Made by a program: the position numbers and the translations under genes. From positions 372,001 to 436,000 of the IMG/VR virus record IMGVR_UViG_3300009545_000018: a DNA stretch of 64,000 bases; one strand, written 5' to 3'. Below, piece by piece: positions 10,573 through 64,000 of the stretch; within the stretch, counting starts at the first letter, position 1, and each line of letters starts with the position of its first letter. The notes below the pieces were generated by a model. It was not told the origin of the DNA. It made no database searches and was given only the letters and a program-made list of their open reading frames with translations.

Positions 10573-11202
10573 ATGATAACAGAACAAGACGCACAAGATT
10601 TGATGATTAGGTTAATTGAGCTTAGAGAACAAGCAAAAAAAAGCGAAGATGTAAAGATAAAAAGTGCTCTAAAAAAGCATGAAGCACAATGTATTGAAAA
10701 ATTTAAATATTTAGTAACCATGAAAACTGGTCGATACAAAATTTTTAGTAATTATGAAGACTTAAATCAAGAGGGATTTGAAGCTTTAATTAAAGCAATG
10801 AATAATTATAATCCAAATAAAGGTTCTTTCTTTTGGTGGGCACATAAATATATTGATACTCGTATTTCACGTAGTGCTAATTTACATACTACTATAAGAT
10901 ATCCACTTAAGGTAGCTAAAGAATCAACACCTCATAAAGAATCTATAATGCCAGTTTTGATTGAAGAAAGATATTGTCCTGACAAAGAATTAGAGTTGGC
11001 TCAAACCTATACTGCCATGGAAAAGGCTTTTGATAAATTATCAAACGAACAAAAAGATATTGTTAATCTTGCTTTTGGTTTTGATAGCGATAAACCAATG
11101 TCTATCAATAAAATTTGTAAGAAATTAAATATTTCAAGATTAAATTGTATTAAAACAATTAATGGTGCTTTATCTATTATGAAGGAGAGCATCAAAGTAT
11201 AA
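10573..11202 (+). CDS. Phage sigma70-family sigma factor
   Basis: Region 2 (EDLNQEGFEALIKAMNNYNPNKG-FFWWA) and region 4 HTH (LSNEQKDIV...MSINKICKKLNIS). Confidence 0.85.
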   Translation: MITEQDAQDLMIRLIELREQAKKSEDVKIKSALKKHEAQCIEKFKYLVTMKTGRYKIFSNYEDLNQEGFEALIKAMNNYNPNKGSFFWWAHKYIDTRISRSANLHTTIRYPLKVAKESTPHKESIMPVLIEERYCPDKELELAQTYTAMEKAFDKLSNEQKDIVNLAFGFDSDKPMSINKICKKLNISRLNCIKTINGALSIMKESIKV

Positions 11203-56561: not shown

Positions 56562-56942
56562 ATGATAAATTGTCAAGTCTGCGGACAAAATCTAGTGAGA
56601 TCAGGCAATGCAGAAATATATACTTGTATGTCTTCTTTCCATTGGATTGAAACTTATAATAAATATATAGAATATAAACACTTTGCTTGTCATTTTAAAG
56701 ATAGTAAAATATTATATAAGGTTGTAACAATCTATCCATATTGTTTCAAAATGTTTTATGAAGATAATAAAACTAGAATATCTAAATCCATTGTCAGGTC
56801 TGAAATTAAGAAAAATGGTAAAGAGACCGCTTACTCTTCTGAAGAAGTTAATATTTTAGAAATTGATTCTATCATAGAATTTCCTTGGTCTAATAAAGAT
56901 CAAGTGCTTGATAAATTAAAATTATATTCTATCTTTTCATGA
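56562..56942 (+). CDS. Array member
   Basis: CQVCG...C; ends LDKLKLYSIFS. Confidence 0.7.
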   Translation: MINCQVCGQNLVRSGNAEIYTCMSSFHWIETYNKYIEYKHFACHFKDSKILYKVVTIYPYCFKMFYEDNKTRISKSIVRSEIKKNGKETAYSSEEVNILEIDSIIEFPWSNKDQVLDKLKLYSIFS

Positions 56943-57259
56943 ACTATCAATGTCATTATTGTAATAAAAATTTAGAAAGAACCTCAACTGTTACATTGTC
57001 TTGTATTGGAACAGGAAATTACATTATTAAATGTTTAAATTGTTTTAAAACTAAAATAAAATTTAAGGATTATAATATTTTTGATGTAATTCTAGTTGGT
57101 AATAATTATAGTTGTCTAAAATTTTCTAATAGTTTTGATAGTAATAAAAGTTGTATAGAGGTAAATTCTTCCGAACATTTATATTTAAATAAGTGTTTAT
57201 CTTATGAAGATTGTATATTAATCTTTAAAAAATTTAACAAAATATCTGCTTTCTTATGA
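56939..57259 (+). CDS. Array member
   Basis: CHYC...C...CLNC; ends KKFNKISAFL. Confidence 0.7.
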   Translation: MNYQCHYCNKNLERTSTVTLSCIGTGNYIIKCLNCFKTKIKFKDYNIFDVILVGNNYSCLKFSNSFDSNKSCIEVNSSEHLYLNKCLSYEDCILIFKKFNKISAFL

Positions 57260-57558
57260 TTTGTCCTATTTGTAACTATAATTTATCTAAAAGTGACCTT
57301 CATGAAGGCGTCTTTATTTGTCAACAAGAAAAGAAAGTAAAACATATTTTTATGTGTTATTTTTCTTTATCTGAACCAGATATTCTAGAAGATTATTATA
57401 TAGAAGTTTCTTCTCTTAATTTAAATATTGATGGTTACCCCACTGACAATGAAACTCATATAACTTTTAATAAGAATACAATAATTTTCTCATATATAGA
57501 TTATTGTGACGCCTTAGAACTCTTTAATAAAATAAAGAAAATGTATATATTTACTTAA
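57256..57558 (+). CDS. Array member
   Basis: MICPIC...C...KH; ends NKIKKMYIFT. Confidence 0.72.
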   Translation: MICPICNYNLSKSDLHEGVFICQQEKKVKHIFMCYFSLSEPDILEDYYIEVSSLNLNIDGYPTDNETHITFNKNTIIFSYIDYCDALELFNKIKKMYIFT

Positions 57559-57560
57559 TT

Positions 57561-57881
57561 ATGTTATGTCCCATCTGTAATAATCCATGTTCTCCTAAAT
57601 TAACTACTAAAAATAATATTATTGGTGTATCTTGTGAAATAATTACAATTAGTAATTATTATCATATATTTATTTATGCTTCTGAAGACAATTTTATGCT
57701 GGCAATATATTACACTACCCTTGAAGAAGAACAATTTATAATTGTTGGCTGTTACAATGATAGTAATTCTGTAAATTTTATTTTTTCTATAAAAAATAAA
57801 ACCTTTTTAATACCACAATTTAATCCCTGTTCTTCTTTAGAAGTAATAGATAAATATTTAAATATGAAGGCATTTATATAA
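57561..57881 (+). CDS. Array member
   Basis: MLCPIC; ends IDKYLNMKAFI. Confidence 0.72.
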   Translation: MLCPICNNPCSPKLTTKNNIIGVSCEIITISNYYHIFIYASEDNFMLAIYYTTLEEEQFIIVGCYNDSNSVNFIFSIKNKTFLIPQFNPCSSLEVIDKYLNMKAFI

Positions 57882-58150
57882 TGTGTCCTATTTGTTTTGA
57901 ACCTCATCCTTCTCATAAAGTTAGATTTAATCATAGGTTTGTTTATATAAATGACTTTCATTGGTCTCTTTCTATACATTATAAAAATACTACTATAGAA
58001 ATTAGCAGAGAATGTCCTAGTAATGGTTTTAATTATAATTATTATGTTTATTTACAGATCGGCTCAAACGAATACCAATTACCAGAATTTGAATTGTGTA
58101 ATACTTTAGAAGTATTAAATAAATTTATGAAAATTAAATCATTTGCATAA
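57881..58150 (+). CDS. Array member
   Basis: MCPIC; ends LNKFMKIKSFA. Confidence 0.7.
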   Translation: MCPICFEPHPSHKVRFNHRFVYINDFHWSLSIHYKNTTIEISRECPSNGFNYNYYVYLQIGSNEYQLPEFELCNTLEVLNKFMKIKSFA

Positions 58151-58209
58151 TTATTTTTAATTGCTTTATCGATTATCATGATTATAGTAGTGCTGATATA
58201 AAATTTTCA

Positions 58210-58488
58210 ATGCATTGTCCAATTTGTAATAAATTTATAACGCCTGACGCCGATGCCATCAGAGTATGTCGAGGTAATAATCCAGAGGGATTTCATCATT
58301 TTTATTTTGAAAACCCAACTAATTTTAGTTTATTTTTTGAAAATGTAGAACTCCATGCCCTTAATAATAAATATACTTTTATAGTCGAAGAGCCCCGCCA
58401 AATAATAAAAATTAATTTAGATAAAATTGAATATTGTGAAATTATGGAAATTATAGATAGATATATGAAAATGTTGGTTTTTTCATGA
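58210..58488 (+). CDS. Array member
   Basis: MHCPIC...C...HH; ends IDRYMKMLVFS. Confidence 0.72.
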   Translation: MHCPICNKFITPDADAIRVCRGNNPEGFHHFYFENPTNFSLFFENVELHALNNKYTFIVEEPRQIIKINLDKIEYCEIMEIIDRYMKMLVFS

Positions 58489-58766
58489 ATTGTCCCATTT
58501 GTCAGCTATCTATGACACTTATTAAAATAAATAATAAAGATGAAAGATTTCGCTGTGAATCAAATAAGCAACATTATTGTGTTTATTATTTAAATGGACT
58601 TACTTGGTGGGTGCAACATAATAACATGGAAATTGAATATGATCATCTATTTGGTTGTAGTTTAATTGTAAATGATGAATCAGGTATAGAACACTATTAC
58701 AGAATAGATTATAATGTGTCTTTTCAAGATGCACCAAAACTTTTAAAATTGAAAGCTTTTTTATGA
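58485..58766 (+). CDS. Array member
   Basis: MNCPIC...C...QH; ends APKLLKLKAFL. Confidence 0.72.
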   Translation: MNCPICQLSMTLIKINNKDERFRCESNKQHYCVYYLNGLTWWVQHNNMEIEYDHLFGCSLIVNDESGIEHYYRIDYNVSFQDAPKLLKLKAFL

Positions 58767-59071
58767 ATTGTCCAGTTTGTAATCAACCTATGATTTATGT
58801 AAAAGAAGATGAAGGTGGTCCGCAAACCTTTAATAGAAATAAATGTAACTATCGTCCTGACCATGATACTAGGCATTATGATGATGGTGCCTGGTTTACA
58901 AAATTAAATAATATTCAAATAGGACATAATCTAGATGATCCTAATCTTTCCAACTTCTATGTAAGAATAATTGGCGAACATGAAACCTCCTTTTTAAATA
59001 TTGATGCAATATCTTTTGAAGATAGTTATAATTATCTTATTAAATTTTCGAAATTGAAAGCCTTTCTATGA
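58763..59071 (+). CDS. Array member
   Basis: MNCPVC...C...DH; ends LIKFSKLKAFL. Confidence 0.72.
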   Translation: MNCPVCNQPMIYVKEDEGGPQTFNRNKCNYRPDHDTRHYDDGAWFTKLNNIQIGHNLDDPNLSNFYVRIIGEHETSFLNIDAISFEDSYNYLIKFSKLKAFL

Positions 59072-59352
59072 ATTGCCCCATCTGTAACCATCAAATGGAA
59101 GAAAGATATAAATATTTAGCTCCCACAGGAATTTTCTTTAGATGTATCCAATTCTCACAACAGCATGATACCGTTTTTATTAACGAAAAAGAATGGACCG
59201 TTAGATATAACAGTATCATTTTGTTTACAATAAATAGTTTGTTTTATTTAAAATTTTCCACCAATAGTCAAAGCATTAATATTCCCAATATTCCTTTTAA
59301 TGAATCTTTTAAATGTATACAAAAATATCTTAAATTACAAAGCTTTACATGA
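59068..59352 (+). CDS. Array member
   Basis: MNCPIC...C...QH; ends IQKYLKLQSFT. Confidence 0.72.
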   Translation: MNCPICNHQMEERYKYLAPTGIFFRCIQFSQQHDTVFINEKEWTVRYNSIILFTINSLFYLKFSTNSQSINIPNIPFNESFKCIQKYLKLQSFT

Positions 59353-59405
59353 TCTGCCCCTTTAATATTCTGCAACGTTATATTAATTTATCAGCTTTCT
59401 TATGA
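59349..59405 (+). CDS. 18-aa tail-only mini-ORF MICPFNILQRYINLSAFL
   Basis: Family start (MICP) fused in frame to the tail; ATGA overlaps on both sides. Confidence 0.6.
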   Translation: MICPFNILQRYINLSAFL

Positions 59406-59772
59406 TTATTCTTTATACTTTTCTCTTGTCTTTAATATTAGCAGCTTGGCTTACAGCTACCCCCAAATTACAGCTAATCCCAACTAAACATCTTCTTATA
59501 TGTCCATTTTGTCTAAAACAATTGGATAAGTATGCTGTTATGTTTAGAGACTGTAATAATTTCCCTCCCCTGGAAAAATTAATCATGCTTTCTCTATGTT
59601 TGCAGAAAATTTCTATCTGATTGTTTATGCTGATGTTACTATTAAATTAGAAAAATATTATAATTCATATTTTATCACAATCAATGATAAAATATTTACA
59701 ATCCCTCCCTTCCAAGTGTGTAATAGTTTAGAGGTAATGCATAAATATTTAAAATTATTGCCCTTTTCTTAA
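59402..59772 (+). pseudogene. Frameshifted array member
   Basis: ICPFC...C in one frame; from the C-rich run near 59561-59570 the -1 frame continues NHAF...MHKYLKLLPFS stop. Confidence 0.6.
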
Positions 59773-59816
59773 CAACATACAATATCTCGATCGCAACTTC
59801 CCTCGCGCATAAAATT

Positions 59817-60071
59817 ATGAAATGTCCCCTCTGTTATGATAGCTGTCAAACTCTCTATTCTAATGAATTTAGATGTACTAAGTTTGATCATAGTTTCGTT
59901 TTTTCTCATCATGATTGGGCTCTCTATCATATACCATCGGATATAATTACTACAACTTATGGGCTATCGTATTATACCAGTAATAATATTATCTCCTTTG
60001 AAACGCTAAAATCCCCTGATGCTGCTATTAAAATTTTGTTAAAATTCTTAAAAATATCCGCCTTTGCCTAA
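59817..60071 (+). CDS. Array member
   Basis: MKCPLC...C..FDH; ends LLKFLKISAFA. Confidence 0.72.
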   Translation: MKCPLCYDSCQTLYSNEFRCTKFDHSFVFSHHDWALYHIPSDIITTTYGLSYYTSNNIISFETLKSPDAAIKILLKFLKISAFA

Positions 60072-60072
60072 A

Positions 60073-60218
60073 ATGAATTGTCCCATTTGTCAAGCTAAAC
60101 TTATAAAATATCTAAGAATCCATTAGAAGAATTGTCTTGCTATAAAATGAAAATTATCCCGTTTTCAGAGTGTTATCAAACGTTACAACGCTATATCAAG
60201 ATGTCTGCCTTCCTATGA
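60073..60218 (+). pseudogene. Frameshifted and shortened array member
   Basis: MNCPICQAKLIK, then the -1 frame at an A-run gives ISKNPLEE...LQRYIKMSAFL stop; internal 23-aa ORF 60147-60218. Confidence 0.6.
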
Positions 60219-60514
60219 AAATTTGTCCCGTTTGTCATCAGCCACTAATAAAAGAAAAATTAGGTAGTCCCATATTTACTTCTTATTATTGTACCGAATT
60301 TGGTCATGTTGCTTCTTGGTCTTCTTCTAACAGTTGGTCATTATACTGCTATGTTAATGATTATTTATATGCTATTATCGGCTCGGAAGATAAATGTAGT
60401 TTTATCACCTTTACTGATAATACAACAAAAGTAACAACAACGAATATTTATACTTCTTTTGAAGAGTCTTATCTGTCTATCCAACGAATGGTTAAATTAT
60501 TAACTTTTATTTAA
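60215..60514 (+). CDS. Array member
   Basis: MKICPVC start via ATGA overlap; ends IQRMVKLLTFI. Confidence 0.72.
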   Translation: MKICPVCHQPLIKEKLGSPIFTSYYCTEFGHVASWSSSNSWSLYCYVNDYLYAIIGSEDKCSFITFTDNTTKVTTTNIYTSFEESYLSIQRMVKLLTFI

Positions 60515-60515
60515 A

Positions 60516-60821
60516 ATGAATTGCCCCCACTGTAATATAATGTGTTCTAAATCTGATCATACTTATGATTGTTTTAAAGATTTTAAACATACTTTTATCT
60601 TTTCTAACAAAAACTCTTGGTGGCTTATTATTAAATATGATAGTCTAATAGAATATCGTTTGGAAATTCATAATTCTCTTCCTACTTTTTATGTCTTTGC
60701 TAATCCTCCCTTTTCTATAGTCTTTGAATATGTAATACATGAACCCGTAATAGCAGCAAATGCTAAATCTATAATAGAAAAATATATTAATCATTATAAT
60801 AAAATGAAAGCCTTTATATGA
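60516..60821 (+). CDS. Array member
   Basis: MNCPHC...C...KH; ends HYNKMKAFI. Confidence 0.72.
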   Translation: MNCPHCNIMCSKSDHTYDCFKDFKHTFIFSNKNSWWLIIKYDSLIEYRLEIHNSLPTFYVFANPPFSIVFEYVIHEPVIAANAKSIIEKYINHYNKMKAFI

Positions 60822-61054
60822 AAGAATTACCTGTTAAAAATGATAGTTATTTCTATAATGATAATAATTGGTCTGTTTATTATGTTTTCTGTAATAAATA
60901 TAAGGTAAGAATTTGCTGCATCTTAGAAAAATGTTATGTCCATATGTTGAATGAACAATACGTAACGGTAAAATGTATGCCAATTAATTCTTTAAAGTTT
61001 GATGATGCAGATTCTTTTGTTAATAGATATTTTAATTTAATGGCTTTTTATTAA
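60818..61054 (+). CDS. Last array member (N-terminal CxxC missing)
   Basis: ends VNRYFNLMAFY. Confidence 0.65.
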   Translation: MKELPVKNDSYFYNDNNWSVYYVFCNKYKVRICCILEKCYVHMLNEQYVTVKCMPINSLKFDDADSFVNRYFNLMAFY

Positions 61055-61361
61055 AATATAATGTCATAGGATGCTGTCAAAGGGAGCAAAGTGTTAGAAA
61101 GTGGGAGGGTGTGGGAAGATAGCTGAATTAATGTCTTTTAATGTTTTGGCTGTCATTTGGGGTGGAATAGGATAGAAAGAGAAGATAAGTTATACTTTGA
61201 TTTAGAAGGTTTAAGGAGGAAAGTAAGATTTTGGATTGGTTTGAACTGTATTATAGAGCTTATAGATGGTTTGATGTGTTTAAAATAGCTGTAGACCGGG
61301 TCCCCAGCCGCCTCGGACCGTCAAACTCCCCACCTTTTCACTGCTGCTACAATACAGGGTT

Positions 61362-61396
61362 TGGCATACTCTCTGCATTATTCAATTAACATACCA
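61362..61396. promoter_or_regulatory. Head-to-head sigma54-type element pair 1 (right half degenerate)
   Basis: TGGCATACTCTCTGCA ... reverse TGGTATGTTAATTGA. Confidence 0.55.
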
Positions 61397-61470
61397 ATTA
61401 TTCTTTTATAAGTCTTATTAATTAATTATACTTACATTACAATCATTTAATAAACATTATTAATCATTTA

Positions 61471-61504
61471 TGGCATCTTTCTTGCTTTCGCTGTTATTTT
61501 GCCT
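61471..61504. promoter_or_regulatory. Head-to-head sigma54-type pair 2
   Basis: TGGCATCTTTCTTGCT; reverse AGGCAAAATAACAGC; 4-nt centre. Confidence 0.55.
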
Positions 61505-61537
61505 CACTGAACAGCTTTTCAGCCCTTTTAGTAGTCT

Positions 61538-61572
61538 TGGTACAGTAACTGCAAGATGCAAAGCCTATACCA
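61538..61572. promoter_or_regulatory. Head-to-head sigma54-type pair 3
   Basis: GG-N10-GC-N5-GC-N10-CC; reverse TGGTATAGGCTTTGCA. Confidence 0.65.
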
Positions 61573-61667
61573 TGCCATAGCAGTCATTCCAGTTACACTG
61601 CACTTACCCATCTTTTAACGGTTAGTACCTGATTAATGTAGCGGGTAGCTGAGATAAGGAGATTACT

Positions 61668-61859
61668 ATGGCACAATTCAAGATTTTGTCTCAAGTCAAT
61701 GGTTCTTGGTTGGAGCAGGGGAAAGATCTCGGCGGTACTACTGTTATGAATCAAGCTGCTCAATTGGAAAAGCAGGGATTGAATGTTCGAGTTTTCCGAA
61801 CTGATATTCCCAAGTTCATTTATGAAACGGGAGCAGGATACCACGGAATCTGGTACTGA
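61668..61859 (+). CDS. Small hypothetical (putative early) protein
   Basis: AAGGAG RBS; followed by a terminator. Confidence 0.7.
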   Translation: MAQFKILSQVNGSWLEQGKDLGGTTVMNQAAQLEKQGLNVRVFRTDIPKFIYETGAGYHGIWY

Positions 61860-61865
61860 AAGAAT

Positions 61866-61893
61866 AAAGGAGCCTAAGGCTCCTTTTCTTTTT
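61866..61893 (+). terminator. Intrinsic terminator
   Basis: AAAGGAGCC-taa-GGCTCCTTT plus T-run. Confidence 0.8.
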
Positions 61894-61900
61894 ATCTTTG

Positions 61901-61935
61901 TGGTATAGGATTTGCTTATTGCAATTAATATACCA
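61901..61935. promoter_or_regulatory. Head-to-head sigma54-type pair 4
   Basis: TGGTATAGGATTTGCT-TAT-TGCAATTAATATACCA. Confidence 0.72.
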
Positions 61936-62007
61936 AGACTTTTTAGATAAAAGAGCTCTACCCATCCTATAACGGAATCAAAGCAGCTATTGTAAGGTAG
62001 GTATCAT

Positions 62008-62379
62008 ATGGAATTCACCTATGAGAATGATGAAGGGGAAGACATTACAGTCACCTTCCCTAGTGTTAAGGTAGTTTGCCCAAGGTGTAAAGGGCACGGA
62101 ACCCACCTTCACAATGATATTGGTAGCTATGCTTACAGCGTAGAAGAATTCCAAGATTCCTTTGATGAAGAAGAACAGGCAGAGTATTTTCGCCATGGTG
62201 GAAGATATGACGTTCTCTGCGAACGCTGTCACGGTAAAAACGTGGTGGATGAGATTGACGAAGAGAAGTGTCAGCAGGATCCGGCTTTGACAGAAGCCTG
62301 GCAAGCTTTTTGTCAGAAAGAAAAGGATGATGCTGATTATGAAAGACTCTGTGAATCAGAGCGGCGCTTTGGTTGCTGA
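62008..62379 (+). CDS. Hypothetical protein with DnaJ-type CxxCxGxG Zn motifs
   Basis: CPRCKGHG, CERCHGKN. Confidence 0.72.
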   Translation: MEFTYENDEGEDITVTFPSVKVVCPRCKGHGTHLHNDIGSYAYSVEEFQDSFDEEEQAEYFRHGGRYDVLCERCHGKNVVDEIDEEKCQQDPALTEAWQAFCQKEKDDADYERLCESERRFGC

Positions 62380-62416
62380 TTGAGATCCCATCCTATAACG
62401 GATTACTGCTAATAGT

Positions 62417-62629
62417 ATGACAACCCTGCAGAATCTCAAGAAGCGTGACTTGTCTTTTGCTTACCAGATTGCAGTGGCAGACTGGAAAAAACTTTCTGCT
62501 ATGTGTTCTGGGCAGTCAGCTGACGATCTGGCTAATGGCTTTCATGGTAAGTCATTGGCTGGAGTGCTGTTTGATTCGGAATTGGCAGTGGATCAGATTG
62601 CAGCTAAGCTGGATCGGTTGAATCCTTAA
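62417..62629 (+). CDS. Small hypothetical protein
   Basis: ATG 14 nt after a box. Confidence 0.65.
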   Translation: MTTLQNLKKRDLSFAYQIAVADWKKLSAMCSGQSADDLANGFHGKSLAGVLFDSELAVDQIAAKLDRLNP

Positions 62630-62635
62630 GGGATT

Positions 62636-62665
62636 GAAAGGGAGGTTTACCTCCCTTTCTTTTTA
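62636..62665 (+). terminator. Intrinsic terminator
   Basis: GAAAGGGAGG-ttta-CCTCCCTTTC plus T-run. Confidence 0.85.
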
Positions 62666-62673
62666 ATTGATGC

Positions 62674-62708
62674 TGGTATGCCGTTTGCATATTGCAATGT
62701 TCGAGCCA
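62674..62708. promoter_or_regulatory. Head-to-head sigma54-type pair 5
   Basis: TGGTATGCCGTTTGCA-TAT-TGCAATGTTCGAGCCA. Confidence 0.72.
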
Positions 62709-62871
62709 ACCGTCATAAAGTTTGCTTTAAACTTGTTCCCATCTGATAACGGATAGATCCTAATAGTATAGTTTTTCTGAGGGTTCTGACTAAAAGTAAA
62801 ACCCTCCCCCTTTACGTTGCAAACAGTAACTGTAGTAGGCAATAAGCTTCCAGTTATATTGTAACAAAGTT

Positions 62872-62902
62872 TGGCGGTATCTTAAAACCGCCACATTTTT
62901 TA
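62872..62902 (+). terminator. Intrinsic terminator
   Basis: TGGCGGT-atcttaaa-ACCGCCA plus T-run. Confidence 0.7.
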
Positions 62903-62934
62903 ATCCCATCATTTAACGGAAAGGTCTAAGTAAT

Positions 62935-63129
62935 ATGAATACTCTTTTTAAGTTGGTTGTTGTGATGTTGGCATTGTTTGCCGTGACTTTCTTGATTCAA
63001 ACCTATGCCAATTCTTGGTTTCATCAAGTGGCATTCACGGCTCCTATCATTGGAACCATGAGCTATGCAGCTTGTACCATTGTGGCAGTAGGTTGTGTGT
63101 TGCTGTCAAAGCTGCATTGGGGCAAGTAA
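62935..63129 (+). CDS. Small membrane protein (2 TM)
   Basis: Hydrophobic; ATG 14 nt after a box. Confidence 0.65.
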   Translation: MNTLFKLVVVMLALFAVTFLIQTYANSWFHQVAFTAPIIGTMSYAACTIVAVGCVLLSKLHWGK

Positions 63130-63227
63130 TGTTAGGTTTCGTGGTGTTTTGCCTGGTAGGTTTTTTTACTGGGCATTGGGTAGTGGGTGGTATTATTGGA
63201 ATTGTAGTATACGCCCTAAATAAGTAA
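63129..63227 (+). CDS. 32-aa hydrophobic peptide
   Basis: TAATG overlap; MLGFVVFCLVGFFTGHWVVGGIIGIVVYALNK. Confidence 0.55.
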   Translation: MLGFVVFCLVGFFTGHWVVGGIIGIVVYALNK

Positions 63228-63259
63228 CTCCCATCAATAAACGGTTGAATGTTATTGAT

Positions 63260-63436
63260 ATGACATATCATCCCAGTTACCGAGCAGTAGATTCTGTTGG
63301 TACTGAATGTGAAACTTTTGAACATGAGTATCAAGCGGTAGACTATTGGACTGGTGCTCCTACTGGAATTGATATTCAATATTGGAATGGTTCTGAATGG
63401 GAAGAATATAATCCTAGGACTTTCACTAAAGATTAA
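63260..63436 (+). CDS. Small acidic hypothetical protein
   Basis: ATG 14 nt after a box; stop 2 nt before the next box. Confidence 0.65.
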   Translation: MTYHPSYRAVDSVGTECETFEHEYQAVDYWTGAPTGIDIQYWNGSEWEEYNPRTFTKD

Positions 63437-63472
63437 TTCCCATCAATTAACGGATTGTACCTAGTTATTGAG

Positions 63473-63652
63473 ATGCAAAACCTAAAAGACCGATTGGAAA
63501 AGTTAGCAGATTCTTTTAAGGGTACTACCAATTCTTTTGGTAGGTTTACCGTCACCAATGTAGGTTGCGGGATTCTGAGAGTTGATGGTGAAGGTGTGCA
63601 GTATACTCCCGATGTAATATTGGGTTTTCTCAATCGACACGGCATTAAGTAA
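63473..63652 (+). CDS. Small hypothetical protein
   Basis: MQNLKDRLEKLAD...; stop 2 nt before the next box. Confidence 0.62.
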   Translation: MQNLKDRLEKLADSFKGTTNSFGRFTVTNVGCGILRVDGEGVQYTPDVILGFLNRHGIK

Positions 63653-63697
63653 TTCCCATCAATAAACGGATTAGATCTATTAGAAAGGATAAAAAAG

Positions 63698-63802
63698 ATG
63701 AAAGCATTCAATTGTTATATTGTCAAGCGCAAGGGCAAAGTCATCAAGGGTGAGAGTCGCAAGCTGCGCAATGCAGCCAAGCGACAACGTCAAGGTCGCT
63801 AA
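63698..63802 (+). CDS. 34-aa basic peptide resembling ribosomal protein bL36
   Basis: MKAFNCYIVKRKGKVIKGESRKLRNAAKRQRQGR; AAAGGA RBS; terminator follows. Confidence 0.55.
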   Translation: MKAFNCYIVKRKGKVIKGESRKLRNAAKRQRQGR

Positions 63803-63805
63803 ACC

Positions 63806-63841
63806 AAAAGAATGAGAGCTTAATTGTTCTCATTCTTTTTT
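63806..63841 (+). terminator. Intrinsic, possibly bidirectional terminator
   Basis: AAAAGAATGAGAGC-ttaatt-GTTCTCATTCTTTT. Confidence 0.85.
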
Positions 63842-63850
63842 AATTGGTCT

Positions 63851-63885
63851 TGGCATATGCTTTGCAACTTGCAATAAGCTTGCCA
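63851..63885. promoter_or_regulatory. Head-to-head sigma54-type pair 6
   Basis: TGGCATATGCTTTGCA-ACT-TGCAATAAGCTTGCCA. Confidence 0.78.
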
Positions 63886-63944
63886 GGCGTTATATTTTTA
63901 TATCCCATCTATTAACGGAAAGACATACTAAGTGGAGGCTGGTA

Positions 63945-64000
63945 ATGTTCATTAAGATTAAAGCTTTGTTCAAGCTGTATGATCTGGGAATCATTAGCAG
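63945..64000 (+). CDS. Start of a gene truncated by the window edge
   Basis: GGAGG RBS; MFIKIKALFKLYDLGIIS... Confidence 0.5.
   Translation, partial: MFIKIKALFKLYDLGIIS

What the first reader, a model, noticed from the sequence alone, without database searches (positions are those of the whole stretch)
61607..63919. Nine CCCATC-N4-AACGG(A/T) boxes punctuate a cassette-like array of tiny genes
Seen: an invariant 6+5-bp bipartite box with a variable 4-nt core, one per unit, in front of nearly every gene from 61668 on; I found no copy in the first 61 kb. It is pseudo-palindromic as DNA (YCCRTY half-sites) but cannot pair as an RNA stem. Three consecutive genes stop exactly 2 nt before the next box (63227/63230, 63436/63439, 63652/63655). 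Three ATGs lie exactly 14 nt after a box with no SD. YTA occurs at +7..+9 in 5 of 9 copies. The 62905 box follows a terminator with no sigma54 pair, so it may itself be a promoter. Known analogy: PeSL regulatory cassettes that shuffle genes in T4-type phages. Inference: a phage-specific promoter (virion RNAP or the sigma at 10573), an operator, or the joint at which gene cassettes are added and excised.
Basis: partly seen in the sequence, partly recalled or inferred. Interest (0 to 1): 0.8.

Follow-up and report, generated by a model that had tools for sequence, protein, structure and literature searches.

The report
Strand-specific promoter-like box of a megaphage
The nine boxes are real and are the first of about 90 one-directional copies that mark gene starts in the fast-evolving, probably first-expressed block of a 448-kb soil phage. 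They most likely act as a phage-specific promoter whose reading enzyme is still unknown.

Summary
CCCATC-N4-AACGG occurs 9 times in the window, against 0 expected. The whole 447,763-bp phage record holds 83 exact and about 92 relaxed copies, all on the + strand. They lie in one block (genome 433,607 → record end → 76,021) that is GC-richer than the rest and made of tiny ORFan genes.

- **Position:** copies sit at gene boundaries. About 37 lie exactly 15 nt before an ATG, three precede tRNA genes, and 10 of 12 strong terminators are followed by a box within 100 nt.
- **Conservation:** a sister phage keeps boxes at orthologous intergenic sites. A distant relative has an invariant TTCCCATCGCCTAACGGCA. 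Other lineages use CTCCCATTCACGG or the bare word CCCATC (360:7 strand bias genome-wide).
- **Other promoters:** genes outside the block carry TGATATA/TATAAT-type -10 motifs instead.

My best reading is a class-specific, non-sigma70 transcription start signal of the first-expressed block, organised like T4-type PeSL cassettes (confidence about 0.55). No start-site data exist, and I found no phage RNA polymerase. The phage sigma is too conserved to track the changes in the box. I found no evidence for excision or joint activity. The reading fits a new variant of a known kind, with moderately high interest.

The parts
61607..61621 (+). Box 1 (CCCATCTTTTAACGG). It is the first box of the whole genomic array. 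A 46-nt leader with an AAGGAG SD leads to the ATG at 61668.
61961..61975 (+). Box 2. It follows a terminator and a palindrome, and a 32-nt leader leads to the ATG at 62008.
62387..62401 (+). Box 3. It lies 7 nt after the stop of the upstream gene, and the ATG at 62417 lies exactly 15 nt after the box.
62738..62752 (+). Box 4, an 'empty' unit. The usual TAATAGTATG is TAATAGTATA here, and no ORF follows.
62905..62919 (+). Box 5. It lies 11 nt after the stem of an intrinsic terminator, with no palindrome between. The ATG at 62935 lies 15 nt after the box.
63230..63244 (+). Box 6. It starts 2 nt after the upstream stop codon, and the ATG at 63260 lies 15 nt after the box.
63439..63453 (+). Box 7. 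It starts 2 nt after the upstream stop codon, and the ATG at 63473 lies 19 nt after the box.
63655..63669 (+). Box 8. It starts 2 nt after the upstream stop codon, and the ATG at 63698 lies 28 nt after the box, with an AAAGGA SD.
63904..63918 (+). Box 9. It follows a terminator and a palindrome, and the ATG at 63945 lies 26 nt after the box, with a GGAGG SD.
61538..61572 (.). A 35-bp palindrome (TGGYA-N6-TTGCA-N3-TGCAA-N6-TRCCA), 34 nt upstream of box 1. Each arm resembles a sigma54 -24/-12 promoter.
61901..61935 (.). The same palindrome, lying between the terminator at 61866-61886 and box 2.
62672..62706 (.). A degenerate copy of the palindrome, lying between the terminator at 62636-62659 and box 4.
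   Evidence: (read from the sequence)
63851..63885 (.). The same palindrome, lying between the terminator at 63808-63837 and box 9.
61866..61886 (+). Intrinsic terminator that ends the first unit. The scan also flags it on the - strand.
62636..62659 (+). Intrinsic terminator.
62872..62893 (+). Intrinsic terminator followed directly by box 5.
63808..63837 (+). Intrinsic terminator (12-bp stem followed by a T run).
61668..63802 (+). Eight small box-led or translationally coupled ORFs of 32-123 aa: 61668-61859, 62008-62379, 62417-62629, 62935-63129, 63129-63227, 63260-63436, 63473-63652 and 63698-63802. Seven were scanned and have no significant Pfam family. One of them shows a weak zinc-ribbon (DnaJ CXXCXGXG-like) match below the curated cut-off. 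The 32-aa ORF at 63129-63227 was not scanned.
61055..61606 (.). A roughly 550-nt non-coding boundary between the tightly packed box-less genes upstream and the start of the box array.

Best explanation
The box is the core of a class-specific transcription start signal, that is, a promoter. It is read on DNA in one orientation and drives the hypervariable, GC-richer and probably first-expressed gene block of this 448-kb phage.

**Proposed organisation.** A transcription unit runs: intrinsic terminator, then often a 35-bp palindrome (probably an operator or enhancer), then a box, then genes. Most internal genes carry their own box.

**Start site.** Transcription most likely starts at or just after the 3' end of the box. 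This would give a leader of about 15 nt holding a weak SD. The fixed 15-nt spacing would then reflect this minimal leader, together with copying of a box-leader-ATG module.

The motif does not fit sigma70 geometry. Its flanks differ between phage lineages around a shared CCCAT core.

**Shown and inferred.** The anatomy, distribution, orientation and conservation are shown. As a side effect, the repeated boxes make each small gene an autonomous cassette, as in PeSLs or morons.
For: 1. **Distribution.** There are 83 exact and about 92 relaxed copies, all on the + strand and none reversed, confined to one contiguous block. Nearly all genes of the genome are on the + strand, so the box marks a gene class rather than genes in general.
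2. **Position.** Copies lie at gene boundaries. Boxes precede tRNA-Leu, tRNA-Arg and tRNA-Leu, so the box is not a translation signal.
3. **Terminators.** 10 of 12 strong terminators are followed by a box within 100 nt (median 71 nt against 288 nt for random positions). Three of these have no other motif between terminator and box.
4. **No sigma70 promoters in the block.** Sigma70-type sites there are at chance level, 37 found against 36.9 expected.
5. **Complementary class.** The rest of the genome carries TGATATA/TATAAT -10-like motifs in intergenic DNA, in territories that complement the box block. This holds in G001 and G003 too.
6. **Sister phage (about 72% nt identity).** Boxes are conserved islands at orthologous intergenic sites (G000 76021, 53241, 57130). 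One orthologous gene has a box in the sister phage and TGATATA in G000.
7. **Deep conservation with lineage-specific flanks.** G009 and L130 have an invariant TTCCCATCGCCTAACGGCA with 16-17 nt to the ATG. G002 has CTCCCATTCACGG (60:1 strand bias). G001, G003, G004 and G007 have bare CCCATC.
8. **Purging where it would misfire.** In the hexamer subclade the word is nearly absent from the antisense strand genome-wide (7 found against about 70 expected). It is also absent in both orientations from the late region. This is what I would expect if a stray copy fires transcription.
9. **Composition.** The block is GC-richer than the rest: 42% against 30% here, and 60% against 32% in G003.
Against: - There is no transcript 5'-end evidence. 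No RNA run was listed, and the DNA contigs were uninformative.
- No cognate polymerase was found. The PF00940 and PF00562 searches were negative, there is no NADFDGD-type motif, and the single HDSF hit has no supporting homology.
- The box does not fit sigma70-family geometry with the observed ATG position (reasoned).
- The phage sigma is conserved while the box varies.
- In the hexamer subclade about 84% of copies in G003 1-60 kb lie inside ORFs, in all three frames. Many intergenic copies directly abut an SD that a downstream start site would exclude. This fits a polar along-the-DNA signal as well as it fits a promoter.
- The palindromes, whose arms resemble sigma54 promoters, could be the real unit promoters.
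- One box (genome 436954) is followed by a terminator with no gene.
Confidence: 0.55

Rival explanations
1. The box is a polar DNA signal read during elongation or DNA handling, not an initiation site. Candidates are a loading or pause site for an antitermination or processivity factor (ops-like, read on the non-template strand), a Chi-like anti-exonuclease word, or a strand-specific nicking site. Real initiation would then occur at the palindromes or elsewhere.
For: - In G001, G003, G004 and G007 the bare hexamer is spread at about 1 per kb inside ORFs in all frames. Its density falls off from the GC-rich block, and it is almost absent in reverse: 246:4, 360:7, 4:352 and 7:273.
- Palindromes with sigma54-like arms sit at unit heads upstream of the first box, and they are conserved across lineages.
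Against: - In G000, G009, G015 and G002 the element is long (13-19 nt) and lies at gene boundaries, after terminators and before tRNA genes, not along genes.
- A Chi-like or ops-like role does not explain why forward copies are also missing from the late region (0 found against about 8.5 expected in G003 240-400 kb). It also does not explain why reverse copies should be harmful.
- Three terminator-to-box junctions leave no room for another promoter.
Confidence: 0.15
2. The box acts in RNA. It would be a cleavage site for a phage or host endoribonuclease that cuts polycistronic early RNA into short-leader mRNAs and tRNA precursors, or a binding site for a translational regulator of the early class (RegA- or RegB-like logic).
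For: - The box is strand-specific, lies just upstream of the RBS and ATG at a fixed distance, sits between nearly all genes of an operon, and precedes tRNA genes.
- Depletion of the complementary word could reflect avoidance of pairing within the RNA.
Against: - There is no RNA structure.
- Boxes directly after strong terminators would have little RNA to act on.
- Enrichment of the hexamer inside coding regions in a subclade would destroy mRNAs if it were a cleavage site.
- The reverse word is also depleted in the late region, which lacks the forward word.
- Copies before tRNA genes argue against a translational role.
Confidence: 0.1
3. The box is an operator: an array of binding sites for a regulator (repressor, activator or decoy for a host protein) that switches the whole early block on or off. 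It would overlap promoters of some other kind.
For: - The sequence is highly invariant across about 90 sites in one regulon.
- There is a weak dyad, YCCRTY-N3-RAYGGR.
- The genome encodes a stand-alone Sigma70_r4-like HTH protein (genome 258534-258710).
Against: - The dyad matches at only 3 of 6 positions and is absent from the G002 and hexamer variants.
- No second conserved promoter element accompanies the box upstream or downstream.
- Sigma70-like sites are at chance level in the block.
- All copies share one orientation, which a symmetric operator would not require.
Confidence: 0.1
4. The primary role of the box is as a recombination joint, where gene cassettes are inserted or excised (integron-like, or PeSL mini-circles).
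For: - Gene content between boxes is almost entirely unshared with relatives that share about 250 core ORFs.
- There are 'empty' or decayed units at genome 434738 and 436954.
- Box-plus-leader modules are duplicated (39 nt at 92% identity).
- A sister phage has a box-led 65-aa gene where G000 has none.
Against: - There is no tyrosine integrase.
- The box has no attC-like inverted repeats or fold.
- A 48.6-kb contig of the same phage from another sample is collinear at 99.985% identity.
- No genuine joints appear in the contigs.
- In the one replacement that could be examined, the breakpoints lie at the flanking gene ends and not at the box.
- Boxes before tRNA genes and conserved operons are kept in place.
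Confidence: 0.03

Closest known systems
PeSL (promoter-early stem-loop) regulatory cassettes of T4-type phages (PMC2839356, PMC4122927)
   Same: [quoted passage not shown]
- They flank small ORFan genes in a hyperplastic region.
- They combine terminator stem-loops with restart signals.
- They make each small gene an autonomous unit.
   Different: - PeSLs carry a consensus sigma70 -35/-10 promoter with an upstream AT-rich tract. This box has no sigma70 geometry, and sigma70-like sites are at chance level.
- Most boxes have no stem-loop.
- No recombination products were seen.
- An additional 35-bp palindrome marks the unit heads.
Phage-polymerase promoter sets (T7, T3 and SP6 class promoters; phiKZ and AR9 non-canonical promoters). 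This comparison rests on my own knowledge.
   Same: - There are many near-identical copies of a 13-19-nt motif.
- All copies have one orientation.
- Specificity positions vary between lineages around a shared core.
- The motif is restricted to one temporal class.
   Different: - No single-subunit or multisubunit phage RNA polymerase gene was detectable.
- The start site is unknown.
- In one subclade the motif shrinks to 6-7 nt.
T4 middle (MotA box) and late (TATAAATA) promoters. This comparison rests on my own knowledge, and PMC2988021 appeared in the search results but was not read.
   Same: Host polymerase would be redirected by phage factors to short non-sigma70 elements that define a gene class.
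   Different: - Those classes keep a sigma70-type -10 element or replace it at the canonical distance from the start site. Here the ATG position excludes such spacing.
- The class looks like the first-expressed one, not middle or late.
Halovirus HF2 intergenic repeats that carry promoters (PMC8707807, abstract only)
   Same: Repeated intergenic sequence classes in a virus genome were shown to be promoters.
   Different: The HF2 repeats are archaeal AT-rich promoter motifs in 29-58-bp repeats. There is no sequence relation to this box.
Strand-polarised words: Chi, KOPS, and single-orientation Type III restriction sites in T7. This comparison rests on my own knowledge.
   Same: In G001, G003, G004 and G007 the CCCATC word shows an extreme genome-wide orientation bias.
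   Different: - In the window's own genome the element is 15 nt long and confined to gene boundaries.
- These models do not predict enrichment at gene starts together with absence from the late region.

Membership tests
T4-type PeSL cassette | Contains a sigma70-consensus early promoter (-35, -10 and an upstream AT-rich tract) | tested here: not met
   The sigma70-type scan of the 14.8-kb dense block found 37 sites against 36.9 expected. The window's 3.5 kb gave 15 against 11.8. No -35/-10 pair is conserved around the box.
T4-type PeSL cassette | Contains a stem-loop that acts as terminator or attenuator | tested here: inconclusive
   12 strong terminators lie in the 44.8-kb dense domain, and 10 of them are within 100 nt upstream of a box. 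However, about 75 boxes have no adjacent stem-loop.
T4-type PeSL cassette | Lies in a hyperplastic region and flanks ORFans | tested here: met
   The small proteins have no significant Pfam family. Almost none of the dense-block ORFs have homologues in G001 or G003, against about 250 shared ORFs elsewhere.
T4-type PeSL cassette | Recombination between copies causes indels, replacements and mini-circles | tested here: inconclusive
   No polymorphism appears against a copy at 99.985% identity. No genuine joints appear in the contigs. One replacement against the sister phage has its breakpoints away from the box. Mini-circles cannot be tested with these tools.
Phage-RNA-polymerase promoter set (T7-like) | A cognate single-subunit polymerase is encoded by the phage | tested here: not met
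   The PF00940 search found nothing, though its controls did not ring either. Only one weak HDSF motif hit was found, in a 669-aa ORF with no PHROG or PDB support.
Phage-RNA-polymerase promoter set (T7-like) | Many near-identical copies in one orientation, intergenic, with a conserved core and lineage-specific positions | tested here: met
Phage-RNA-polymerase promoter set (T7-like) | Transcription starts at a fixed position relative to the motif | not testable with these tools
   No RNA run was listed.
Multisubunit virion or non-virion polymerase promoters (phiKZ type) | Split beta/beta' genes carrying the NADFDGD catalytic motif | tested here: not met
   The PF00562 search was negative, with its controls positive. 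No D[FY]DGD motif occurs in a plausible context.
Integron attC cassette array | Tyrosine integrase plus imperfect inverted-repeat sites that fold as single strands | tested here: not met
   The PF00589 search was negative, with its controls positive. The box does not fold (MFE 0) and shows no excess structure.
Sigma70-family promoter read by the phage sigma (window 10573-11199) | The specificity of the sigma co-varies with the motif across lineages | tested here: not met
   The sigma is 76% and 67% identical to its G001 and G003 orthologues, against median ORF identities of 55% and 53%, while the box differs between these lineages. Neither motif lies upstream of the sigma gene.
Chi-like or other polar genome word | Oriented over-representation along the DNA, independent of gene boundaries | tested here: not met
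   This holds for the window's genome: 95 of 111 forward CCCATC words lie in the box block, 92 of them in the relaxed boxes, and the boxes lie at gene boundaries. The feature is met only in the G001, G003, G004 and G007 subclade.

The most novel reading that the evidence does not exclude
The CCCAT-core element is the recognition word of a transcription system that current profiles cannot see. This would be a virion-delivered or immediate-early factor or polymerase. It would start transcription at a non-sigma70 signal in a clade of soil phages of about 320-480 kb. In one subclade the signal has shrunk to a 6-7-nt polar word that saturates the leading, GC-rich end of the genome (8 per kb). That word is purged from the antisense strand and from the late genes. 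All genes are co-oriented and site density falls along the genome, so this machinery might also pull the genome into the cell, as T7 does on a smaller scale.
Probability: 0.2. Interest if true: 0.85.

Novelty: new variant of a known kind. Interest (0 to 1): 0.6.

Why it matters
Very large uncultivated phages are known almost only from their gene content. How they schedule expression is largely unknown. This clade offers a sharply defined cis-element that can be scored by computer. The element marks the hypervariable block, which probably holds host-takeover or anti-defence genes.

The element has no sigma70 geometry, and the genome has no recognisable polymerase of its own. The element also changes between lineages around a fixed CCCAT core. 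It therefore gives a direct handle for three things:
The factor could be sought by DNA pull-down or virion proteomics.
- **Annotating relatives.** The first-expressed genes of related metagenomic phages could be marked by motif alone.
- **Testing the cassette idea.** One could test whether repeated promoter cassettes drive ORFan turnover outside the T4 group.

Tried and rejected
- **RNA evidence.** No RNA run was listed for a 1.5-kb query. Only one DNA run holds the region. Laying its contigs gave only cross-matches between boxes, so the 'joints' are repeat artefacts.
- **Phage polymerase hunt.**
  - PF00940 and PF00562 were negative.
  - PHROG and Pfam scans of 18 ORFs of 669 aa or more gave RIIA, SbcC, a DnaE-like polymerase, sheath, baseplate, ribonucleotide reductase and collagen-like fibres. 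None gave a polymerase for RNA.
  - The 1785-aa ORF with a DYDAD motif resembles beta-helix tail proteins by language-model features, and this is a weak lead.
  - PDB sequence searches were empty.
- **Sigma54 system.** The phage encodes no Sigma54 DNA-binding domain and no bEBP ATPase.
- **Sigma70 geometries.** I tried every way of fitting the box to sigma70 spacing, using CCCATC or TAACGG as -35 with TAATAT or TCTAAT as -10. All place the start site downstream of the ATG, so I rejected them (reasoning).
- **RNA hairpin.** Rejected.
- **Relatives in cultured phages.** There is no DNA match for the region. The nearest DnaE homologues are at most 34% identical.
- **Early-gene homologue search.** A search of IMG/VR with an early-block protein found only the same phage.
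- **Literature.** Nothing was found on this motif or clade.
- I repeated it with one more base.


Full report
**Observation.**
The pattern CCCATC-N4-AACGG occurs nine times in the window, at exactly the reported coordinates, all on the + strand. It occurs nowhere else in the 64 kb, and 100 dinucleotide-preserving shuffles gave none. The stop-to-box distances of 2 nt and the three ATGs 15 nt after the final GG are as described. The box at 62905 lies 11 nt after the terminator stem at 62872-62893.

Three details need correcting:
- Position 10 of the box is T in 79 of 83 genomic copies, so the variable core is 3 nt.
- The 15-nt spacers are purine-rich just after the box, so 'no SD' is only partly true.
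- The dyad symmetry is weak, at 3 of 6 positions.

**Genomic setting.**
The window is positions 372,001-436,000 of a 447,763-bp virus record from a rhizosphere metagenome. The record has 31% GC, about 91% coding density under the standard code, and almost all genes on the + strand.

It encodes the following proteins:
- RIIA
- an SbcC-like nuclease
- a DnaE-like polymerase
- tail sheath and a baseplate wedge protein
- ribonucleotide reductase
- one sigma70-family protein with regions 2 and 4 (window 10573-11199)

I found no T7-like or multisubunit RNA polymerase by Pfam or by catalytic-motif scans.

**Whole-genome distribution.**
The record has 83 exact boxes, or about 92 when one mismatch is allowed. 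Every copy is on the + strand. All lie in one stretch from 433,607 to the record end and on from position 1 to 76,021. The stretch is dense (about one box per 330 nt) up to roughly 15 kb and sparse after that.

A 508-aa ORF reads across the record junction and ends right at the box at 1338, so the stretch is contiguous. The dense part is GC-richer than the rest, at about 42% against 30%. Because nearly all genes share the + strand, the box marks one class of genes, not gene starts in general.

**Fine anatomy.**
The extended consensus is tCCCATC-nnn-TAACGG-a.
- The ATG lies exactly 15 nt after the box in 33 copies by the ORF scan (37 by the position count) and 16 nt after it in about 7 more.
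- In that class the spacer reads roughly (a)TGAAgrTAtCTAAT. Copies with longer leaders carry ordinary SDs.
- Boxes sit at gene boundaries. 56 are fully intergenic and 23 overlap only the last codons of the upstream gene. In about 14 of those the box's own TAA is the stop codon. Most of the 13 'inside' cases are artefacts of crude ORF calling.
- Three boxes precede tRNA genes: 12015 before tRNA-Leu, 71737 before tRNA-Arg, and 76021 before tRNA-Leu.
- The region has no excess RNA structure.

**Transcription-unit context.**
The 44.8-kb dense domain has 12 strong intrinsic terminators. Ten are followed by a box within 100 nt, with a median of 71 nt against 288 nt from random positions. In seven or eight cases a conserved 35-bp palindrome lies between terminator and box. 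Its form is TGGYA-N6-TTGCA-N3-TGCAA-N6-TRCCA, and each arm resembles a sigma54 -24/-12 element. In three cases nothing lies between them.

Sigma70-type promoter matches in the block are at chance level, 37 found against 36.9 expected. The phage encodes no sigma54 and no bEBP.

**A second, complementary motif class.**
Outside the box block, intergenic regions on the + strand are enriched for TGATATA(w). This reads as an extended -10, TGnTATAAT-like. Late-region upstream sequences carry TATAAT(A)-like elements. This class also precedes tRNA genes. It is found in relatives G001 and G003, again outside their early blocks.

The sigma gene has neither motif upstream, but it has a sigma70-like arrangement.

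**Relatives.**
The DnaE-like polymerase retrieves a clade of IMG/VR phages of about 320-480 kb at 52-87% identity (tree). Motif states are as follows:

| Genome(s) | DnaE identity to G000 | Motif state |
|---|---|---|
| G009 and fragment L130 | 61% | Invariant TTCCCATCGCCTAACGGCA, + strand, intergenic; 16-17 nt to the ATG in the dense array; palindrome at the head of the array |
| G015 (67-kb sister fragment, about 72% nt identity, syntenic to G000 30-95 kb) | not measured | Nine exact boxes |
| G002 (clade without the G000 box) | 73% | CTCCCATTCACGG, 60 forward to 1 reverse, intergenic, after terminators, tRNAs and palindromes |
| G001, G003, G004, G007 | 72-77% | Bare CCCATC only: 246:4, 360:7, 4:352, 7:273 genome-wide |

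In G015, three or four boxes lie at orthologous intergenic positions (G000 76021, 53241, 57130). They are conserved islands in otherwise diverged spacers. One orthologous gene carries a box in G015 and TGATATA in G000.

In the hexamer subclade the word is densest (about 8 per kb) in a 45-60% GC block. Its density then declines over the next 200-300 kb. It is absent in both orientations from the late region, and it often lies inside ORFs.

The palindrome is conserved at unit heads in G000, G001, G002, G003, G004 and L130.

**Gene content between boxes.**
The small proteins have no significant family assignment. Almost none of the dense-block ORFs have homologues in G001 or G003, although about 250 other ORFs do. 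The block is therefore a hyperplastic region of ORFans.

Signs of module copying and decay:
- 39-nt box-plus-leader duplicates at 92% identity.
- A unit whose ATG has become ATA (window 62738).
- A box followed directly by a terminator (genome 436954).

I saw no active rearrangement:
- A 48.6-kb contig of the same phage from another sample is collinear at 99.985% identity.
- There is no integrase.
- In a 1.5-kb replacement relative to G015, the box-led gene lies inside the insert while the breakpoints are at the flanking gene ends.

**Interpretation.**
The element is asymmetric and class-restricted. It lies at gene and tRNA 5' sides and follows terminators. It is conserved at orthologous intergenic sites, and in one case it is interchangeable with a -10-type motif. 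Where 6 nt suffice, the word is purged from places where firing would be harmful. Together these features fit a promoter best.

The ATG position means the start site must lie within about 9-15 nt after the box, so the box occupies the region just upstream of the start. No sigma70 -35/-10 assignment is compatible with this.

The shared CCCAT core recalls the CCCCAT -10 of sigma32 promoters. This is from my own knowledge and is a lead only. No -35 partner is conserved, and the phage sigma does not resemble RpoH in particular.

The flanks change between phage lineages while the phage sigma is unusually conserved. The higher GC content of the block would fit genes that must be translated before the phage tRNAs are made, or genes recently acquired. 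Either way, the timing is inferred and not shown.

**Rivals.**
- **A polar elongation or DNA-handling signal.** This is supported mainly by the intragenic hexamers of one subclade. It does not explain the gene-boundary anatomy in G000, G009, G015 and G002, nor the avoidance of the word in the late region.
- **An RNA-level cleavage or regulator site.** This fits the position near the RBS. It fits poorly with boxes placed right after terminators, and with enrichment of the word inside coding regions.
- **A symmetric operator.** This is weakened because the dyad is not conserved.
- **A primary recombination joint.** No evidence supports it, although recombination between repeated boxes remains a plausible side effect, as in PeSLs (PMC2839356, PMC4122927).

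**Verdict.**
It is the edge of a genome-scale regulon conserved across a clade of uncultivated soil megaphages. It most likely represents a non-canonical, phage-specific promoter organised in PeSL-like cassettes. That makes it a new variant of a known kind, with an unidentified reader. Start-site mapping is the decisive missing experiment.

Noticed in passing
window 61538-61572, 61901-61935, 63851-63885 (degenerate copies at 61357-61394 and 62672-62706); genome-wide 9 copies, all in the box block: A 35-bp palindrome, TGGYA-N6-TTGCA-N3-TGCAA-N6-TRCCA, in which each arm matches the sigma54 -24/-12 spacing. It sits between a terminator and the first box of a unit, 14-58 nt upstream of the box. 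It is conserved in G001, G002, G003, G004 and L130. The N6 parts are not complementary, so it looks like a protein-binding site rather than a hairpin. The phage encodes no sigma54 and no bEBP.
   Followed up: partly
genome 48-430 kb, e.g. window 30422 (genome 402422) and window 58194 (genome 430194): A second promoter-like class, TGATATA(w), reads as an extended -10. It is enriched on the + strand in intergenic DNA (45 forward against 12 reverse), upstream of genes and tRNAs. Its territory complements the box block, and it is conserved in G001 and G003. Late-gene upstream regions carry TATAAT(A)-like elements.
   Followed up: partly
G001, G003, G004 and G007 (loci L080-L126): The bare hexamer CCCATC is extremely polarised genome-wide: 246:4, 360:7, 4:352 and 7:273. 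Its density falls off from a GC-rich block. It is absent in both orientations from about 140-160 kb of late genes. Many copies lie inside ORFs in all three frames.
   Followed up: partly
genome 433.6 kb to about 20 kb (window 61600-64000 is its start); G003 412-436 kb; G001 250-280 kb; G002 420-480 kb: The motif-dense block is compositionally distinct from the rest of each genome: 42% against 30% GC here, about 60% against 32% in G003, and 45-52% against 30% in G001. This may reflect host-like codon usage for genes expressed before the phage tRNAs are made, or recent gene acquisition.
   Followed up: partly
L238-L243 (G002): A related 481-kb phage uses a different strand-specific intergenic box, gC-TCCCATTCAC-GG (60 forward, 1 reverse). 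It shares only the CCCAT core and a terminal ACGG with the box in this window.
   Followed up: partly
genome 447574 through the record end to 1337: A 508-aa ORF reads in frame across the end and start of the 'linear' record and stops right at a box. The record is therefore probably a closed or permuted genome. A 48.6-kb contig from another sample ends at the same point.
   Followed up: partly
about 14 boxes, e.g. genome 5263, 437536, 447528: The TAA inside the box (positions 10-12) serves as the stop codon of the upstream gene, so those proteins end in Pro-Ile-Xaa. In three more copies the variable triplet itself is the stop codon.
   Followed up: yes
window 62738-62850; genome 436954-437000 (L001 3954-4000): Two 'empty' units. 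In the first, the box is followed by TAATAGTATA (ATG decayed to ATA) and no ORF. In the second, the box is followed 5 nt later by an intrinsic terminator with no gene. The second would give a hairpin transcript of about 35 nt if the box is a promoter.
   Followed up: no
genome 437100-437212 (L001 4100-4212): A tRNA-like 3' end (GGTTCGATTCCTTAG T-arm) lies just upstream of the box at 437213. Neither ARAGORN nor Rfam calls it. It may be a decayed tRNA or another small RNA downstream of the box at 437061.
   Followed up: no
L061 (G009), L048 (G014) and L069: The DnaE-like polymerase gene is about 1.4-1.7 kb longer in these relatives. In G009 the extra part is in frame (1624 aa, possibly an intein). 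In G014 and L069 it carries many stop codons (possibly an intron or an inserted homing gene).
   Followed up: no
genome 258534-258710 (L245): A 152-aa ORF has a stand-alone Sigma70_r4-like HTH (E = 5e-6). It lies just downstream of a TGATATA site at 258293. It may be a transcription regulator.
   Followed up: no
window 56939-61054: Immediately upstream of the box array lies a run of about 100-aa + strand ORFs with overlapping stops and starts and no boxes. A roughly 550-nt non-coding gap follows, containing a GC-rich stretch (CCGGGTCCCCAGCCGCCTCGGACCG). This is a sharp module boundary.
   Followed up: no
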